Virus record (IMG/VR): IMGVR_UViG_3300033233_000001 | Span: 124,001 to 188,000 of that record | DNA: 64,000 nt | Strand: one strand, 5' to 3' | Shown: piece after piece, positions 2,909 through 63,258 of the stretch | How positions within the stretch are numbered: the first letter of the stretch is position 1 | Layout of the letters: every line of letters begins with the position of its first letter | The notes under the pieces: model-generated | Databases searched by the model: none | What the model was told of the DNA's origin: nothing | What the model saw: only the letters and a program-made list of their open reading frames with translations | Translations under genes and position numbers: made by a program

Positions 2909-3357
2909 CTCTTCTTTCGCGTGCGCTTCAGGTAGTCGGCCGCAGCGCGCAGGAGAGCGTCGTCATCATCGGCACTGCGCACGATGGCGGCGCAGGTTCG
3001 GCAGAGGAAGCCGCGCAGGTTTCCGTGCTGGTCGACGTCGGCGATCTTCTTCGGTGCACGCGCACCGTCGCTGTCGGAGCCGAGGTTATCCATGCAGATC
3101 GGACACGCGTCGCCCTGGCGCGTGAGCGTCTCGCGTCGCAGGACCGGATCGATCGCGGGCGTTGCTGCCGGCGCCTCTCCCTTCTTCTGTGCACGGTAGT
3201 ACGCGCGCAGATGATCGAGACAGAGCCCGCTTCGTCTGTCTGCGAACGCGGCGCTCCAGTCGAGGTTGCACTCAGAGCAGTGGACGAACGTGCCGCGCTT
3301 CCGTTCTTCAGCGGTCGGCGCGGTGTACGGCACCTCGGGCTTCCTCGGCCTTCCCAT
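2905..3357 (-). CDS. Zn-finger plus degenerate endonuclease VII-like protein
   Basis: QGDACPIC...RGFLCRTC...LLRAAADYL pattern, but the catalytic DH and N are replaced. Confidence 0.7.
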   Translation of the reverse strand: MGRPRKPEVPYTAPTAEERKRGTFVHCSECNLDWSAAFADRRSGLCLDHLRAYYRAQKKGEAPAATPAIDPVLRRETLTRQGDACPICMDNLGSDSDGARAPKKIADVDQHGNLRGFLCRTCAAIVRSADDDDALLRAAADYLKRTRKKS

Positions 3358-3366
3358 CCTCAGATT

Positions 3367-3392
3367 CTACCATTTCTCCGGCCAGAGTGCCC
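3367..3392 (-). promoter_or_regulatory. 26-bp repeated promoter element, copy 1
   Basis: GGGCACTCTGGCCGGAGAAATGGTAG, identical to 20643-20668; runs into extended -10 TGgTAGAAT 6 nt before the ATG at 3357. Confidence 0.6.
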
Positions 3393-3916
3393 CGTCCGCG
3401 TTCCCTGGCGCGACTGTCGTGGTCGGCAAGCCCTTCAACGACGCCGCAGAGCATCTCGGTCGCAAACAGGCTCAGCAGGTCTCGTCGGCCTCGAACGCGA
3501 AGATCATCCATCAGCTGGGCTACAAGTGTTTCGGTGTTCGTGAAGTAGACGAGCACTACACCTCGCAGACCTGTCCGGTATGCGGGGAGCGTCGCCGCAT
3601 GAGGCGAGAGTACGAGTGCAAGCAGTGCGGGTTTCGGGCCCCACGAGATGTCGTGGGGCTGACGAACATCCGCAGCATCGGCCTGCATGGGAAGATGGTC
3701 TTCCCTGCCGAGGTGCCGAAGCGGGTCGTGTTCGTGCGGCCTGCCTCGGCCTTCAGGCCGAGGAGGGTCACCACCGGGAAACTTTCTCGTCTGGAATACT
3801 ATTCGTCTGGAATAAGGGCACGCTCGATAAGGGCCACTAAAGAGATCGCCGACGCTAAAATAGCTTGTTTTCCGGCAGAAAACCTAGTAGAACGCGGGGA
3901 TGGCTCGGCCGCGTGA
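3393..3916 (+). pseudogene. tnpB: N-terminally truncated TnpB (RuvC-II/III and Zn ribbon)
   Basis: VVVG..VDEHYTSQTCPVCG..YECKQCG..RDVVGLTNI; no RuvC-I and no credible start. Confidence 0.75.
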
Positions 3917-25889: not shown

Positions 25890-26430
25890 AGAAAGGGTAA
25901 GCGCTGGAGTCGAACCAGCCTTTGTCCCGTCACGGTCTTCCGTGCACCGGGGCGTGCCCACGCACGCTCACCCATAGGCGGGCCGAAGTGAAAGTAACCT
26001 TTCCATCCCGGCCCTGTTTGTCGTTGTATAGCTTGGTAGCCATAAGACGCGCACCTAGCGCTGTTCACGTCCGGCATGGGGCACCCTTAGATCGGAGTCC
26101 CGGCGCTCTGCCTCTGAGCTACCTCTCCGTAAAAGTGGAGAGGGCTGGATTTGAACCAGCGACCTCCGGAAATTTGGATACCGTAGTGATGACGTGTCGA
26201 GCAGTGCGTTCTCAGCTTGTCCACTAGAGCTTGACGCTGCGATTCACCTTGAATGGGCGTGTGCGAAACCTTGCCTCTGCTATTCGGCTACTCCCCGGAG
26301 ATGTCGTCAGAACGGAACGAGTGTTCCGATCGGGGAGGCAGGACTTGCACCTGCAAATTTGGGTTACGCGCCCGAGATTGAGATTGGTGGTCCTTTGGCG
26401 ACGAGCACCATTGCCCGCCGCGCCATCTGT
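25890..26430 (-). ncRNA. long structured RNA with permuted tRNA-like modules
   Basis: T-arm / closed acceptor stem / D-arm modules at 26273-26354 and 26100-26169; a further T-arm at 25903-25919. Confidence 0.7.
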
Positions 26431-50169: not shown

Positions 50170-50209
50170 TGTTGGTTTTGGTGAGACCCTTTCTAGCTGA
50201 TTGAAACTC

Positions 50210-50266
50210 CGAGCAAGGTGGTGTCCGACGGGTTTCAACCAAAGATAACCATCGGACTTCGGCTCG
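50210..50266 (-). ncRNA. Y-RNA-like element
   Basis: GCCGAAG..GGTTATC..CCTTGC immediately after the Ro60 stop. Confidence 0.72.
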
Positions 50267-50274
50267 AAGCAGAA

Positions 50275-51999
50275 CTAGTCGCGGATGAAGTCGGCGATGA
50301 CGGCCGGCGCCGCTGCGTCGAAGCCTACCACGTCGATCATGCCGGCGTCGGTCGGATCTGCGATCGTGAACTCCGACGCGTCGGTCGCGACCACGATGAG
50401 CTTGGACGCGATGCCCATGTTCTCGCGGTACTGCTTGAGCGCCACGTGCGGATGCACGGCGCCGGCCCACGTCTCGTTGTCCGTCGCGACGTAGAACGCC
50501 TCGACCTTCTGCTTCTGCGCGAGCGCGTGGAGCATCGGCAGCGCGCAGTCGGTGCCGCCCATGGGAACGGCCTCCATGGCCTTGATGACGTCGGGCAGCG
50601 TCGTCTTCGCCGTGATGTTGACCGGGAGCAGACGCGAGGGCTGGCCGCCCCAGCGTCCGCCGTAGCCAGCCGCGTGACCGGCCGAGCCGCTCGCGAAGCC
50701 CACGATGTCGTAGTCCGACTCGCGCCGCGCCGTGACCATCGCCATGCAGCCGACGGCCTCGCGTGCCGTGAGCGTCGTGCCCGCGATGAAGCTCGACGCC
50801 ATCGAACCTGACACGTCGAGCGCGAGCATGATGGACTTGCCGGTGGGCTCGACAGTCTCGAACGCCAGGTAGAACGCGTCGTCGAGGGCGTCGATGATGG
50901 ACTGCACCGGCGACCACGTCAGCTTGCCCTTCTCGCCGTGGCCGGCTGCGTACGTCTTGAGCGCGAGGAGCACTGCGATCGGATGCAGCCGCGACTTCTT
51001 GATGGCGTCGGCGTTCTTCAGCTGCTTCACGACGAGCTTCGATGCGTCCGAGCCAGGAACGAGCAGGCCGTTCGCCGTCATGCGCCCGAGGTTGCGCACG
51101 CAAGCGTGCATCGGCATGCGCTGGAGCAGCGCATCCCATACAACCGCGTGCTTCTGGTGCTCTGACGGCACCATCTCGTGAGTGAGCCCGTACTCACGGA
51201 TGATCGTGGCCGCCTCGTTCGCGTCCTTCGCAGCGCGCACCTTCTCGACGCCCTCGATCAGCGCCGGCAGGGCTCCGGCGGCGACCGCCTCGTACGAGAC
51301 GCCCGCCTCCTGCTGCTTGCGCTTGACGGAGCGCTCCCCGAGGCCGTCGCGTCCCGCGATGGTCCAGCGCAGGATGGACGAGACGATCGGATCCGTCGTC
51401 TTCGGGTGCGCCTGCCGAAGCAGGTCGCGGTGCGAGCGTCCGCCGCGCTGCTGGTACTTCAGCAGCTGGTAGGCGAGGTCTCGCCCCTCCTTGCTCGTGT
51501 ACCACGCGCCGACCGCGCGGCGCAGGCCCGAGCCCCAGCCGCGAAGCTGCTCGACCTGAGCGACGAACTCGAAGAGGTGCGTGCCGGTCCGGCACACGCG
51601 TGGCAGCGCGGCAAGCGCGAGGCGCCGCACAACCGCGTCCTCGTGGGCAGCGGCGACGGCGAGCGCGAAGATCGCCGCATCGTTCTTCGGCGCGCGACCC
51701 GACTCGCTGAGCGCAGCGATGTGCTCGACAGCGGCCGCAGCGTCGTCCTTGAGGCAGCGGCCGAGCGCGGTCGCGTTCTCCTTGACGAGCTTCTTCTCGC
51801 CGACGTGGAACGTCCCGCCCTCGGCGCCGAGGATCAGAAAACGGTCCAGCCGCTTCCAGTCGTCCACTTCAAACGTGAAGCCACCGGCCGCGTTCTTGAC
51901 CTGACGCACGTCGGCCTTCGCCGACTGCGGCGCGTCCTCGCGCGCAGCGGACACGGACTTCTTCTTCGACGCACCGAGGTGCGCGGCGTAGTTGGACAT
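50275..51999 (-). CDS. rsr: Ro60/Rsr TROVE-vWA RNA-binding protein
   Basis: NAAGGF..RFLILG, KYQQRGG..HRD, DVSGSM, GGTDCALPM, TDNETW and GFD. Confidence 0.95.
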   Translation of the reverse strand: MSNYAAHLGASKKKSVSAAREDAPQSAKADVRQVKNAAGGFTFEVDDWKRLDRFLILGAEGGTFHVGEKKLVKENATALGRCLKDDAAAAVEHIAALSESGRAPKNDAAIFALAVAAAHEDAVVRRLALAALPRVCRTGTHLFEFVAQVEQLRGWGSGLRRAVGAWYTSKEGRDLAYQLLKYQQRGGRSHRDLLRQAHPKTTDPIVSSILRWTIAGRDGLGERSVKRKQQEAGVSYEAVAAGALPALIEGVEKVRAAKDANEAATIIREYGLTHEMVPSEHQKHAVVWDALLQRMPMHACVRNLGRMTANGLLVPGSDASKLVVKQLKNADAIKKSRLHPIAVLLALKTYAAGHGEKGKLTWSPVQSIIDALDDAFYLAFETVEPTGKSIMLALDVSGSMASSFIAGTTLTAREAVGCMAMVTARRESDYDIVGFASGSAGHAAGYGGRWGGQPSRLLPVNITAKTTLPDVIKAMEAVPMGGTDCALPMLHALAQKQKVEAFYVATDNETWAGAVHPHVALKQYRENMGIASKLIVVATDASEFTIADPTDAGMIDVVGFDAAAPAVIADFIRD

Positions 52000-52409: not shown

Positions 52410-52492
52410 TGGAGAGCGGAGGACTCGAACCCCACAGCCGAAGCTGCTAACCGGTCTTCAAAGCCGGGCCGCGCCTTGCGACTTCGCCCTCC
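52410..52492 (-). tRNA. tRNA-Ser(TGA)
   Basis: Long variable arm. Confidence 0.72.
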
Positions 52493-52758: not shown

Positions 52759-52840
52759 AGGAAGGAGGAAGAGTCGAACTTCTGCGCCGAAACGCCGCGG
52801 GTTTTCGAGGCCCGTCCCACGCCGTGTGGGTTCACCTTCC
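52759..52840 (-). tRNA. tRNA-Ser(CGA)
   Basis: Long variable arm. Confidence 0.75.
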
Positions 52841-52844
52841 AGAA

Positions 52845-52932
52845 CGGAGAGAGGTGGTATCGAGCCACTGCGCCGAAGCGCCACGCGGTATTCCAAACCG
52901 GCCCGAGACCTTCTCGGTTCACCCTGCTCTCC
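52845..52932 (-). tRNA. tRNA-Ser(GGA), 5' end altered by insertion
   Basis: Anticodon GGA; the 5' strand GGAGAGCAG is supplied by the element end. Confidence 0.65.
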
Positions 52933-54223
52933 AAAATGTGATCGAACGTGTTCGTTCGGTCACGACTTGGCTCCTGCTTCCGCCACGACACTTGCTCGAC
53001 GCTGAGGCCGTCGAGTAGAGGCAGCCGTGTCCACAGGCGTAGCCTTGCGGCTGTTCCCCGAAAGCCTCGGGTACGCTTCCAAATTCAACGCGGCGTTGCG
53101 GTCTCGGTCCAGGACCAGACCGCATGCCTCGCACTCGTACGTCCTCGTGCCCAGCGACAACTCGGCCTTCACGACTCCGCAGCCGCTGCACGTCTTACTC
53201 GACGGGAACCACCGGTCAGCCACGATCACCTCGCAGCCGTAGACAGGTCCCTTCTGTATCAGCAGCGTCCTGAACATCCCCATCCCGACATCCGAGAGCG
53301 CACGCGCCAGCGAATGGTTTCTGAGCATCCCTGCCACGTTCATGCCCTCGATGACCGCCGCTTGGGTTTCACGCGCGATCTTCGTGGTCGTCTTGTGCAG
53401 GAAATCCTTCCGGATGTTCGCGACGTCTCGGTGAATCTTCGCCAGTTCCTCACGAGCCTTACGCCTGTTCGCGCTTCCCTCCTGTCTACGATGGAGCTTC
53501 CTGTTCGCACGCCGCAGCTTCTTCAACGCCTTCCGAAGCGGCTTCGGCGCGTCTAGGGGCTCTCCTCGTGACGGCACGACCGCAGTCTTGAGGCCCAGGT
53601 CGATGCCGAGGATCTCGTGCTCCGGGACGTTCGGCACCCGGAAGTCGCCCTCGACCTGAACCGACAGATACCAACGGTCGGCGATGCGCTTCACGCGACC
53701 GCCGAGGATCTTGCCGTGCAGCCTGAGCGGCTCGCGCGTCTTCACGCTGCCGATGACCGGGAGGTGAACGTGCTTGCCATCGGCAAGGAAATGGAATTTG
53801 TCGTTCGCGACGTAGAAGGCGTCACGGGTCTTGCCCTTCTTCTTGAAGTTCGGTGGTCCGACGCGTGGGCCCTGGCGCTTTCCCGTGATGCTCTTGATGT
53901 AGTTCGAGAACGCCGTGTCCAGGTCGGAGAACGCGCCGGCATTCGCGTCTCGCGGCGACTCGAAGATCCAGGGGAACGCTTCGCCCTTGATGGCGTTGAA
54001 CTGCTTCTTGAGCTTGGTCCCGCTGGGCTTCTGGCCGGCCCTGTACTGGCGGTTCCACTCGTGAAGTGCCCAGTTGTACGTGAAGCGCGCGACACCGCAT
54101 GCACGCAGCATCGCCTGGCGCTGCCGTACTGTCGGGTCGAGAGCTATGACGTGTCCGTGGATCATGTGATCGTGCGTCTGTAGTTTGTCCGTAAATGTCC
54201 GCGAAGACAAGAGCTAGCTATGG
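52924..54223 (-). mobile_element. non-autonomous IS607-like TnpB element
   Basis: Removing it rejoins GGAG|GGTGAACC, the tRNA 5' end; CGATCACAT occurs near both ends; no tnpA. Confidence 0.65.
52960..54165 (-). CDS. tnpB: TnpB RNA-guided endonuclease (intact D-E-D)
   Basis: N-terminal HTH, GIDLGLK, IEGM, CSGC/CEAC and DRDRNAALNL. Confidence 0.93.
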   Translation of the reverse strand: MIHGHVIALDPTVRQRQAMLRACGVARFTYNWALHEWNRQYRAGQKPSGTKLKKQFNAIKGEAFPWIFESPRDANAGAFSDLDTAFSNYIKSITGKRQGPRVGPPNFKKKGKTRDAFYVANDKFHFLADGKHVHLPVIGSVKTREPLRLHGKILGGRVKRIADRWYLSVQVEGDFRVPNVPEHEILGIDLGLKTAVVPSRGEPLDAPKPLRKALKKLRRANRKLHRRQEGSANRRKAREELAKIHRDVANIRKDFLHKTTTKIARETQAAVIEGMNVAGMLRNHSLARALSDVGMGMFRTLLIQKGPVYGCEVIVADRWFPSSKTCSGCGVVKAELSLGTRTYECEACGLVLDRDRNAALNLEAYPRLSGNSRKATPVDTAASTRRPQRRASVVAEAGAKS

Positions 54224-54474
54224 CTCCTACCAGAACCAGCCAGCGTCGCGCTTCGGCGGCACGATGCGCTCGTACCGTGCGATGCGGATGAGATGCGCGA
54301 CACGCGCCCGGTAGCGCTGGTTCAACCAGCGACGATACCATGAGGGCGAGCCGTCCGGGAACCGTCCGTTCTTGCCGACGCTATTGTGATGGAACGTCCG
54401 AGCCATGGTCCTCCAGGCTCGGGGCGATAGGCCCCGGGCACTAGAAGACCGCGCCTTTTCGATCACAGCGCACG

Positions 54475-54774
54475 TCAGCGTCGCCGATCGTCTCGGCGCT
54501 CGTAGCCGCCGCCGCCGCCAGGCCGCGGCTTGTCCTGCGCCTCGTTCACGTTGATCGTGCGCCCGTCCAGCGTCGAGTTGTTCATGCCCTTGATGGCGGC
54601 CTCCATCTCAGCCGGCGTGTTGTACGACACGAAGCCGAAGCCGCGCGAACGGCCGGTCTCTCGGTCGGTGATGACCTTGGCCTCGGTGACCTTGCCGAAG
54701 GGCGCGAACGCCTCCATCAGCCCCTCGTCATCGATCGACCACGGCAGGTTACCTACGAACAGCTTCTTCGCCAT
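54475..54774 (-). CDS. RRM RNA-binding protein
   Basis: RNP2 LFVGNL, RNP1 RGFGFVSY and a Gly-rich tail. Confidence 0.93.
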   Translation of the reverse strand: MAKKLFVGNLPWSIDDEGLMEAFAPFGKVTEAKVITDRETGRSRGFGFVSYNTPAEMEAAIKGMNNSTLDGRTINVNEAQDKPRPGGGGGYERRDDRRR

Positions 54775-62055: not shown

Positions 62056-62126
62056 TCGTCGCGCCGAGAGTCGCACTCGGGTCTTCCGCGTGTCGGGCGG
62101 GTACTCTTCTGTTGAGCTACGCGACG
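62056..62126 (-). tRNA. tRNA-Val(GAC)
   Basis: Cloverleaf, atypical loop. Confidence 0.68.
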
Positions 62127-62974: not shown

Positions 62975-63258
62975 CTCCTGGGGCTGGAATCGAACCAGCG
63001 ACCACTCGGTTACGTACCACTTCGGCTTTCGCCGCCCGCAGGCGCGGTTCGTGGTCTGGACTATCCCATCGTCCTCGACTTGCAGTCGGTCGGACGTCGC
63101 CCCTCTAGTCTCTACACCTTCCCCCGAGGGGGCTTGGCTCGGGATTGCCACGTCTCTTGCGACGAGGGTTCCCCGAGTTTGGGCGATTTTCACCGGCCGA
63201 TTACTCGGTCGGGCTGCCAACGGACAGCCGAGCGCTCTTCCATCTGAGCTACCCAGGA
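62975..63258 (-). tRNA. tRNA-Asn(GTT), intron-containing
   Basis: Exons 63224-63258 and 62975-63012 join to give CTCGG-CTGTTAA-CCGAG. Confidence 0.88.
63013..63223 (-). ncRNA. group I self-splicing intron (211 nt)
   Basis: P1 U-G pair (GGCTGT/GCAGCC), AATCCCGAGCCAAG, GTAGAGACTA, GATAGTCC and terminal G. Confidence 0.88.

What the first reader, a model, noticed from the sequence alone, without database searches (positions are those of the whole stretch)
52845..54230. TnpB element inserted into a tRNA-Ser 5' end, with its terminus mimicking the lost acceptor strand
Seen: joining the flanks gives GGAG|GGTGAACC, matching the neighbouring tRNA-Ser start (GGAAGGTGAACC). An AG dinucleotide occurs at both junctions, and the element end GGAGAGCAG can pair with the tRNA's CTCTCC. 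TnpB has an intact D-E-D triad and there is no tnpA. Known: TnpB guides derive from the right flank. Inference: the guide is tRNA sequence with a TAM near TAGGAG, so the element could home into empty alleles in co-infecting phages while possibly leaving a usable tRNA.
Basis: partly seen in the sequence, partly recalled or inferred. Interest (0 to 1): 0.62.

Follow-up and report, generated by a model that had tools for sequence, protein, structure and literature searches.

The report
IS607-type TnpB element splitting phage tRNA-Ser
A 1.3-kb transposon remnant carrying an RNA-guided nuclease (TnpB) sits exactly four bases into a serine tRNA gene of a giant phage, so its guide RNA reads tRNA sequence; it is a clear but fairly ordinary case of a known transposon family in an unusual place.

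Summary
The element spans window 52924-54223 on the minus strand. It is a tnpA-less derivative of an IS607-family transposon, the family whose transposase is a serine recombinase.

- **Right end:** it finishes with ...GAGAGCAG, as in 28 metagenomic relatives, and their flanks diverge completely after it.
- **Left end:** it starts directly after GGAG, as at 20 of 21 relatives' left ends. This matches the experimentally known IS607 TnpB target-adjacent motif (TAM), AGGAG.
- **Nuclease and guide RNA:** TnpB keeps its D-E-D triad and zinc finger. The guide-RNA (omegaRNA) scaffold keeps helices that covary across relatives.
- **Target:** the flank, and so the guide, is nucleotides 5-24 of tRNA-Ser(GGA). 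Related phages without the element carry this tRNA intact, starting GGAGGGTGA or GGAGAGTGAACC.

Two refinements:

- A covariance model of this phage family's Ser tRNAs still scores the interrupted gene at 82.5 bits. It aligns the element's last four bases, GCAG, in place of GGAG, leaving one mismatch (C2xC71).
The same GGAGAG end occurs in the closest relative elsewhere, so it is not an adaptation to this tRNA.

No exact empty allele was found. Homing and tRNA usability remain inferences.

The parts
54227..54406 (-). Conserved 59-aa phage gene. Its stop codon TAG (54229..54227) overlaps the GGAG next to the element.
   Evidence: Homologues of 57-60 aa at 63-78% identity. The gene ends at the same codon in relatives L105, L112, L115 and L196.
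54224..54228 (-). AGGAG: left flank and predicted target-adjacent motif (TAM). GGAG equals tRNA nucleotides 1-4 in the rebuilt gene.
   Evidence: GGAG lies 4 nt before the left-end core motif at 20 of 21 sites. The IS607 TnpB TAM is AGGAG in 18 of 22 strains tested (PMC11061315).
54166..54223 (-). Left end of the element (58 nt), starting CCATAGCTAGC.
   Evidence: L121 and L143 have the same start after GGAG, while their upstream flanks differ.
52960..54165 (-). tnpB, 401 aa, RNA-guided nuclease with an intact RuvC triad and zinc finger.
   Evidence: Pfam domains. NCBIfam IS607_TnpB is the best hit at 298 bits, and guided_TnpB passes its cut-off. D189, E273, D355, C326, C329, C345 and C348 are invariant in relatives.
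52924..53080 (-). omegaRNA scaffold, overlapping the 3' end of tnpB. The 5' limit is approximate.
   Evidence: In the alignment of 29 elements, 25 pairs are predicted and 22 of them show compensatory changes. The window keeps these helices.
52924..52934 (-). Conserved right-end terminus TTGGAGAGCAG. The last base of the element is 52924.
   Evidence: Mean pairwise identity 0.89 here against 0.26 beyond it. Flanks are unrelated in all relatives.
52904..52923 (-). Predicted 20-nt guide, equal to tRNA-Ser(GGA) nucleotides 5-24.
   Evidence: These are the first bases after the conserved right end. The guide position follows established TnpB biology (PMC11061315, PMC13565253).
52845..52927 (-). tRNA-Ser(GGA) gene as it now stands. 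The first 4 nt (GCAG, 52927..52924) come from the element and the rest is original tRNA.
   Evidence: The family-specific covariance model, built without this gene, scores it 82.5 bits with a single C2xC71 mismatch. The anticodon GGA and the gene order match relatives.
52927..52932 (-). GGAGAG inside the right end: an alternative, out-of-register partner for the tRNA 3' strand CTCTCC.
   Evidence: The minimum-free-energy fold pairs it with the 3' strand. The same GGAGAGCAG terminus occurs in the closest relative L220.
52759..52840 (-). Neighbouring tRNA-Ser(CGA), starting GGAAGGTGAACC.
   Evidence: Rfam tRNA-Sec model 35.9 bits. Family covariance model 89.2 bits.

Best explanation
**What it is.** A non-autonomous IS607-family element lies between nucleotides 4 and 5 of the phage's tRNA-Ser(GGA) gene. 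It consists of a left end, tnpB and an omegaRNA/right end, with no tnpA.

**How it got there (inferred).** A serine-recombinase TnpA supplied in trans placed it 3' of the motif (A)GGAG, which here is the first four bases of the tRNA. AG is the two-base overlap shared by both junctions.

**What the sequence shows.**
- The element's boundaries.
- An intact TnpB catalytic set.
- A conserved, covarying guide-RNA scaffold.
- A flank that is tRNA sequence.

**What follows from known TnpB biology (inferred).**
- Transcription through tnpB gives an omegaRNA whose roughly 16-20-nt guide is tRNA nucleotides 5-24.
- TnpB would cut any allele reading AGGAG plus that sequence. That means the uninterrupted tRNA gene after excision, or in a co-infecting sibling phage.
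- Repair from an occupied copy would restore or spread the element.
- The occupied site is protected because the motif there reads GCAG.

**Consequence for the tRNA.** GCAG differs from GGAG by one base. The gene therefore keeps full length with only a C2xC71 mismatch. Whether it is still processed and charged is unknown.
For: - **Right-end boundary:** 28 relatives end ...TAGAGAGCAG and then diverge. Identity is 0.89 before the boundary and 0.26 after it.
- **Left boundary and motif:** GGAG at 20 of 21 left ends, including autonomous copies with tnpA. The published TAM is AGGAG, and single TAM mutations abolish cutting (PMC11061315).
- **Family:** the relatives' upstream gene is an NF033518 IS607 transposase at 190 bits, with Resolvase and MerR HTH domains. 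The window TnpB's best NCBIfam hit is IS607_TnpB.
- **Activity potential:** D189, E273, D355 and four Cys are invariant. The scaffold has 22 of 25 pairs with compensatory changes.
- **tRNA identity:**
  - Relatives keep the order 59-aa gene ... Ser(GGA), Ser(CGA) ... Ser(TGA), Glu(CTC), Ro60, with no TnpB.
  - Their Ser(GGA) genes start GGAGGGTGA (L105), GGAGAGTGAACCGAGAAGG (L112) or GGAGAGGGAATCGAGAAGG (L196).
  - The family covariance model scores the window gene 82.5 bits with GCAG in place of GGAG.
- **Self-protection:** the only site in the window within 3 mismatches of GGAG+guide is the occupied site itself, with GCAG.
Against: - No exact empty allele was found, in IMG/VR or among contigs carrying the identical neighbouring proteins.
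- In relatives, about 0.6-0.75 kb lies between the 59-aa gene and Ser(GGA), holding an ORF and a fourth Ser-type tRNA. The window's left flank is therefore not a simple ancestral state, and a deletion must also have occurred.
- The Rfam RAGATH-18 model, which describes the guide RNAs of the characterised IS607 TnpBs, does not hit this element or its relatives.
- By sequence, the closest solved natural TnpB is ISDra2 (E 1e-52), not an IS607 enzyme.
- No transposase is at hand, so present-day mobility is doubtful.
- Nuclease activity, the guide's ends and the TAM are not measured.
Confidence: 0.78

Rival explanations
1. The element first inserted at a ribosome-binding-site GGAG just after the 59-aa gene, as is typical for this clade. 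A later deletion or recombination then fused its right end to nucleotide 5 of the tRNA. On this reading the left GGAG never belonged to the tRNA.
For: 12 of 28 relatives have an ATG-initiated ORF starting 3-13 nt after the right end, against 7.5% at control positions. Relatives carry an ORF plus a Ser(GCT)-type tRNA between the 59-aa gene and Ser(GGA), and the window lacks both.
Against: The deletion would have to end exactly at the last base of the element and exactly after the tRNA's own GGAG. That is expected from site-specific insertion and improbable for a random deletion. The present structure and the predicted guide are the same under both histories.
Confidence: 0.12
2. The element is an immobile relic. 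TnpB and its RNA are no longer used, and the tRNA is simply a disrupted pseudogene.
For: No tnpA in the window or detected on the contig. Only one copy exists. ARAGORN and Rfam do not call the tRNA. The minimum-free-energy fold of the present sequence is not a cloverleaf.
Against: The 401-aa ORF is uninterrupted with all catalytic and zinc residues. The scaffold helices are kept. The tRNA body scores as well as its intact paralogues, 82.5 against 77-89 bits. The uninterrupted orthologues in L112 and L196 are also missed by Rfam, so the failure to call it says little.
Confidence: 0.1
3. GGAGAG is the tRNA's own 5' end, carrying a 5-nt insertion (CAGGG), and the TnpB element merely ends upstream of it.
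For: L112 and L196 tRNAs start GGAGAG. Against L112 the window has exactly five extra bases.
Against: GAGAGCAG is the invariant terminus of 28 unrelated insertions. GGAGAGCAG also ends the closest relative's element next to unrelated DNA.
Confidence: 0.02

Closest known systems
IS607-family TnpB elements, e.g. ISFba1 TnpB with RAGATH-18-derived guide RNA (PMC11061315)
   Same: - TnpB of about 400 aa with a D-E-D RuvC triad.
- The guide is taken from DNA just beyond the right end.
- The TAM is AGGAG.
- The partner transposase in relatives is an IS607 serine recombinase.
- No inverted repeats and no target duplication beyond a shared dinucleotide.
   Different: - No tnpA in this copy.
- The guide scaffold is not recognised by Rfam's RAGATH-18 model.
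- The element ends in CAG rather than the GG usual for IS607 (PMC13565253).
- It lies in a phage tRNA gene.
ISDra2 TnpB of IS200/IS605 (PDB 8bf8, 8exa)
   Same: It is the closest natural solved structure by sequence (E 1e-52). It has the same domain order and the same right-end-derived guide logic.
   Different: ISDra2 uses a Y1 HUH transposase, subterminal hairpins and an AT-rich TTGAT motif. Here the motif is GGAG, and relatives carry a serine recombinase.
IStrons: IS605 or IS607 elements fused to a group I intron (bioRxiv 10.1101/2023.11.20.567912; PMC13565253)
   Same: Both are TnpB elements whose insertion can leave the interrupted host gene product nearly intact. In both, the host-sparing RNA and the guide RNA are made from the same transcript and can compete.
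   Different: No intron is present here. Any sparing would come from the element's last four bases standing in for the tRNA's first four, not from splicing.
Free-standing homing endonucleases in phage tRNA gene clusters (e.g. T4 SegB; from my own knowledge, not checked here)
   Same: A selfish nuclease gene sits among phage tRNA genes and is predicted to cut the element-free allele of a co-infecting relative. The relatives' tRNA arrays carry HNH genes.
   Different: The target is read by an RNA guide rather than by protein. The element has transposon ends.

Membership tests
IS607 family (TnpB-bearing) | Serine-recombinase TnpA (MerR-like HTH plus resolvase domain) encoded in the element | tested here: not met
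   No tnpA lies between the left end and tnpB, which are 58 nt apart, and none is in the window. Relatives with the same ends do carry it: NF033518 at 190 bits against a cut-off of 110. This copy is therefore a non-autonomous derivative.
IS607 family (TnpB-bearing) | Insertion 3' of a G-rich motif, with TnpB TAM AGGAG or GAGGG | tested here: met
   The left flank is T-AGGAG. GGAG is present at 20 of 21 relatives' left ends. The literature TAM is from PMC11061315. This is sequence evidence only, with no biochemistry.
IS607 family (TnpB-bearing) | TnpB with RuvC D-E-D and a C-terminal zinc ribbon | tested here: met
   NCBIfam IS607_TnpB is the top hit at 298 bits but falls below its strict cut-off of 350. 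guided_TnpB passes at 275 against 100.
IS607 family (TnpB-bearing) | RAGATH-18-type guide RNA scaffold | tested here: not met
   No RAGATH-18 hit at E<=1 in the element, and none at E<=0.1 in four relatives. A different, conserved and covarying scaffold is present.
IS200/IS605 family | Y1 HUH transposase, subterminal hairpins, AT-rich 4-5-nt target | tested here: not met
   The partner transposase in relatives is a serine recombinase. The target is GGAG.
Active TnpB-omegaRNA nuclease | RNA-guided, TAM-dependent DNA cutting | not testable with these tools
   Only sequence integrity and scaffold covariation can be shown.
tRNA-Ser (functional gene) | Cloverleaf with a paired acceptor stem, a long variable arm and a Ser anticodon | tested here: inconclusive
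   - **For:** the family covariance model scores it 82.5 bits with anticodon GGA, a variable arm and one C2xC71 mismatch.
- **Against:** default ARAGORN and Rfam do not call it. The rebuilt empty allele is not called either, except at a lowered threshold. The minimum-free-energy fold prefers the out-of-register GGAGAG helix.
tRNA-Ser (functional gene) | 5' processing by RNase P and charging by SerRS | not testable with these tools
   Needs RNA 5'-end mapping and aminoacylation assays.

The most novel reading that the evidence does not exclude
The element's terminal GCAG (or GGAGAG) works as the tRNA's 5' acceptor strand. One primary transcript would then be partitioned between a functional tRNA-Ser(GGA), cut out by RNase P, and an omegaRNA whose guide is the same tRNA's 5' part. 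This would create a TnpB-versus-RNase P competition like the intron-versus-guide conflict of IStrons. More generally, the near-identity of the right-end terminus (GCAG) and the target motif (GGAG) would make this clade's insertions nearly harmless to whatever lies downstream, whether a ribosome-binding site or a tRNA.
Probability: 0.15. Interest if true: 0.7.

Novelty: new member of a known kind. Interest (0 to 1): 0.42.

Why it matters
- **A natural guide with a defined target:** this TnpB guide is aimed at a defined, conserved, non-coding gene, a phage tRNA, in a 298-kb uncultured phage.
- **Mode of spread:** if active, the element would behave as an RNA-guided homing element among competing phages. 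It would sit alongside the protein-guided HNH endonucleases found in the same tRNA arrays of relatives.
- **A concrete test case:** it allows a direct test of whether the right-end terminus of IS607-type elements lessens the damage of insertion.
- **Ready for assay:** the clade's ends, motif and guide scaffold are now defined well enough to be tested.
- **Limits:** family, motif and guide logic are already known, so this is an instructive example rather than a new kind of system.

Tried and rejected
- **Phage records:** searches of 50,697 phage records found no close DNA relative and only distant TnpBs at 40% identity or less.
- **Genome and viral scans:** Genome contigs and viral-contig scans with TnpB gave nothing closer than 46% apart from the source contig itself.
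- **Neighbouring proteins:** viral scans with the 59-aa protein and Ro60 found only the source contig.
- **Empty allele:** an exact-pattern scan for GGAGRGTGAACCGAGAAGGTC in IMG/VR gave 0 hits. Identical-protein look-ups returned only the same context. Two relatives' contigs had no DNA available.
- **A rejected idea:** I had thought the G at right-end position -9 was a compensatory change made for the tRNA, because it is A in all 28 aligned relatives. The closest relative, L220 at 67% identity, also ends CGGAGAGCAG next to unrelated DNA, so I dropped this.
- **A chance repeat:** the 11-nt repeat at 52835-52845 and 54226-54236 is coincidental. Its upstream copy is the conserved W-[YF]-W-stop coding end of the 59-aa gene.
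- **ARAGORN on the rebuilt gene:** the in-silico rebuilt empty allele was not called at default settings. Calls appeared at -ps80 for both the rebuilt and the present sequence, with odd ends, so this was uninformative.

Full report
**Setting.** The window is part of IMGVR_UViG_3300033233_000001 (Ga0334722_10000009), a 297,749-bp phage contig. Everything discussed lies on the minus strand. ARAGORN finds 33 tRNA genes in the window. The local order on the minus strand is:
- a 59-aa gene (54406..54227);
- tnpB (54165..52960);
- a tRNA-like sequence with anticodon GGA;
- tRNA-Ser(CGA) (52840..52759);
- tRNA-Ser(TGA) (52492..52410);
- tRNA-Glu(CTC);
- a Ro60/TROVE-vWA gene.

**The observation.**
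- The left flank ends TAGGAG.
- The element ends GGAGAGCAG.
- The right flank starts GGTGAACC.
- The next tRNA starts GGAAGGTGAACC.
- AG stands at both junctions.
- GGAGAG is complementary to the tRNA's 3' strand.

TnpB has the three expected Pfam domains. Counted from the ATG at 54165, which is also the gene call on record (P0001), it keeps D189, E273, D355 and the four zinc-ribbon cysteines. All of these are invariant among 31 homologues. No transposase gene and no second copy of the element or its ends exist in the window.

**Right boundary.** A protein search found many TnpBs of 50-67% identity, and a metagenome scan fetched 80 loci. In 28 non-redundant relatives the DNA downstream of tnpB shares a conserved stretch. 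It ends ...GAAGTGGGAACTAAACCGTG, a short hairpin, then CACAAATTAGAGAGCAG. After that the sequences are unrelated to each other. The window aligns to this end throughout and finishes TTGGAGAGCAG at 52924. Mean pairwise identity is 0.89 over the last 11 nt and 0.26, the random level, over the next 20 nt.

**Left boundary and target motif.** TnpB-only relatives and relatives with an upstream transposase gene share a left-end core, AGCTAGC or ACTCTAG. It is preceded by four element-specific bases and then by GGAG. This holds at 20 of 21 distinct sites picked without reference to GGAG, and the DNA further upstream is unrelated. L121 and L143 even share the window's GGAG|CCATAGCTAG. The element is thus 52924-54223, 1,300 bp. 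The upstream gene in the autonomous relatives is an IS607-family serine-recombinase transposase: NF033518 at 190 bits, with Resolvase and MerR-type HTH domains. The window's TnpB hits NCBIfam IS607_TnpB best. [quoted passage not shown] The window's flank reads T-AGGAG. The AG shared by both junctions (GG-AG and GC-AG, in all relatives) is what a serine recombinase's two-base crossover would leave. That last step is inference.

**Guide RNA.** An alignment of the last 200 nt of 29 elements gives a consensus structure of 25 pairs, of which 22 show compensatory changes. One example is a long-range helix that switches between CCCA/TGGG and CCTG/CAGG. The window keeps these helices. Rfam's RAGATH-18 model does not recognise this scaffold, so it is a divergent guide-RNA type within the IS607-associated TnpBs. 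By the established rule that the guide is the DNA just beyond the right end, the guide is 52923..52904.

**The target is a tRNA.** The 59-aa protein has homologues in related phages. These keep the order 59-aa gene, Ser(GGA), Ser(CGA), Ser(TGA), Glu(CTC), Ro60 and have no TnpB. Their Ser(GGA) genes begin as follows:
- GGAGGGTGA in L105 and nine other loci;
- GGAGAGTGAACCGAGAAGGTCTCGGGCC in L112;
- GGAGAGGGAATCGAGAAGG in L196.

The window's flank, GGTGAACCGAGAAGGTCTCGGGCC, is this gene from nucleotide 5 onward, and the missing four bases are GGAG. I built a covariance model from ten Ser tRNAs of this phage family, leaving out the interrupted one. It scores window 52927..52845 at 82.5 bits, between its two intact paralogues at 89.2 and 77.1 bits. 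It aligns the element's last four bases, GCAG, to the tRNA's GGAG, and the only defect is a C2xC71 mismatch.

**Mimicry, reconsidered.** The simplest mimic is therefore in register and follows from the terminus (GCAG) and the target motif (GGAG) differing by one base. It is five bases out of register, however, and in that fold it disrupts the T arm. The G that makes GGAGAG is A in all 28 aligned relatives. The closest relative (P0002, 67% identity; L220) also ends CGGAGAGCAG next to unrelated DNA, so this G predates the tRNA insertion and is not an adaptation to it. Whether the tRNA is usable cannot be decided here. Default ARAGORN and Rfam miss it, but they also miss the uninterrupted L112 and L196 orthologues. 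ARAGORN does not call the rebuilt gene at default settings either.

**Mechanism.**
- **Shown:** the boundaries, intact nuclease residues, a conserved guide scaffold and a tRNA-derived flank.
- **Also shown:** the occupied site is the only sequence in the window within three mismatches of GGAG+guide, and it carries GCAG at the motif.
- **Inferred from known TnpB biology:** the ribonucleoprotein cuts AGGAG+guide alleles, and recombination with an occupied genome restores or spreads the element. This is restorative or canonical homing, reported for IS605 and IS607 elements (PMC13565253).
- **Consequence for relatives:** the Ser(CGA) neighbour has GGAA and matches the guide for only 8 nt, and the relatives' Ser(GGA) genes differ within the first bases of the guide region. 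I infer that only alleles of this phage's own lineage would be good targets.

**History of the left flank.** In relatives, 0.6-0.75 kb lies between the 59-aa gene and Ser(GGA). It holds an ORF and a fourth Ser-type tRNA, scoring 69-85 bits with the family model. The window has neither. A deletion has therefore happened as well. Whether it came before the insertion, making the tRNA abut the stop codon, or after it cannot be told. A microhomology deletion between two GGAG motifs would fit either order, but that is speculation. The junction at tRNA nucleotide 4/5, right after GGAG, points to site-specific insertion at the tRNA in any case.

**What was not found.** No exact empty allele turned up in IMG/VR or on contigs carrying the identical neighbouring proteins. 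A profile scan for this clade's TnpA did not return the source contig.

**Verdict.** It is a tnpA-less IS607-type TnpB element in a known family, with the known motif, sitting in an unusual target. The tRNA-sparing idea is attractive but untested, and its one seemingly adaptive base change turned out to be inherited.

Noticed in passing
window 52759-52840, 52410-52492, 52845-52927 (-); L105:5928-6009: All Ser tRNAs of this phage family look tRNA-Sec-like: an acceptor of 6-8 bp, a 4-bp T stem, a 5-6-bp D stem and a long variable arm. They hit Rfam tRNA-Sec at 27-43 bits, below the threshold of 47, rather than the tRNA model. ARAGORN misses two of the three in the window.
   Followed up: partly
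window 50206-50271 (-), next to the Ro60 gene at 50275-51996; also 26101-26168 (-); L105:42-142: Directly downstream of the phage Ro60/TROVE-vWA gene there is a hit to RF01656 (ceN72-3_ceN74-2, a nematode small RNA) at 39.3 bits, just above its threshold of 38. Weak YrlA (Y RNA-like) hits occur at 26101-26168 (32.8 bits) and in relative L105 (36.8 bits). The phage may encode its own Ro60 RNA partner.
   Followed up: no
window 63043-63233 (-): A group I intron-like hit of 36.4 bits, below the threshold of 50, lies in the gap between tRNA-Trp and tRNA-Gln of the tRNA array.
   Followed up: no
window 62056-62126 (-): Rfam calls a tRNA here at 51.6 bits that ARAGORN did not list.
   Followed up: no
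relatives L117-L182, right flanks: This TnpB clade tends to sit between a ribosome-binding-site-like GGAG and a start codon. In 12 of 28 relatives an ATG-initiated ORF starts 3-13 nt after the right end, against 7.5% at control positions (binomial p about 3e-7). The target motif doubles as a Shine-Dalgarno sequence.
   Followed up: partly
L173:1501-2276: A 5'-truncated TnpB of the same clade, with a right-end-like terminus ...AAAGAGCAG, lies inside another tRNA cluster (Trp, Asp and Glu on the opposite strand) on a 22-kb metagenome contig.
   Followed up: no
L220:2270-2300: About 60 nt upstream of the closest relative's tnpB start there is a second right-end-like terminus (CACAAGTCTGAGAGCAG). 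It may be the remnant of a tandem or nested insertion.
   Followed up: no
L105:405-860, 1498-2043 (in L106), 3171-3686; L105:7166-7594: The tRNA arrays of the related phages are interspersed with HNH endonuclease genes and carry a small PCRF/RF-1-domain protein. The window has an RRM_1 protein (54475-54774) and an HNH gene a few kb upstream of the 59-aa gene.
   Followed up: no
L105:5692-5775; L112:3561-3644; L196:2223-2307: Relatives have a fourth Ser-type tRNA just upstream of Ser(GGA): anticodon GCT in L196, scoring 69-85 bits with the family model. No counterpart exists anywhere in the 64-kb window.
   Followed up: partly
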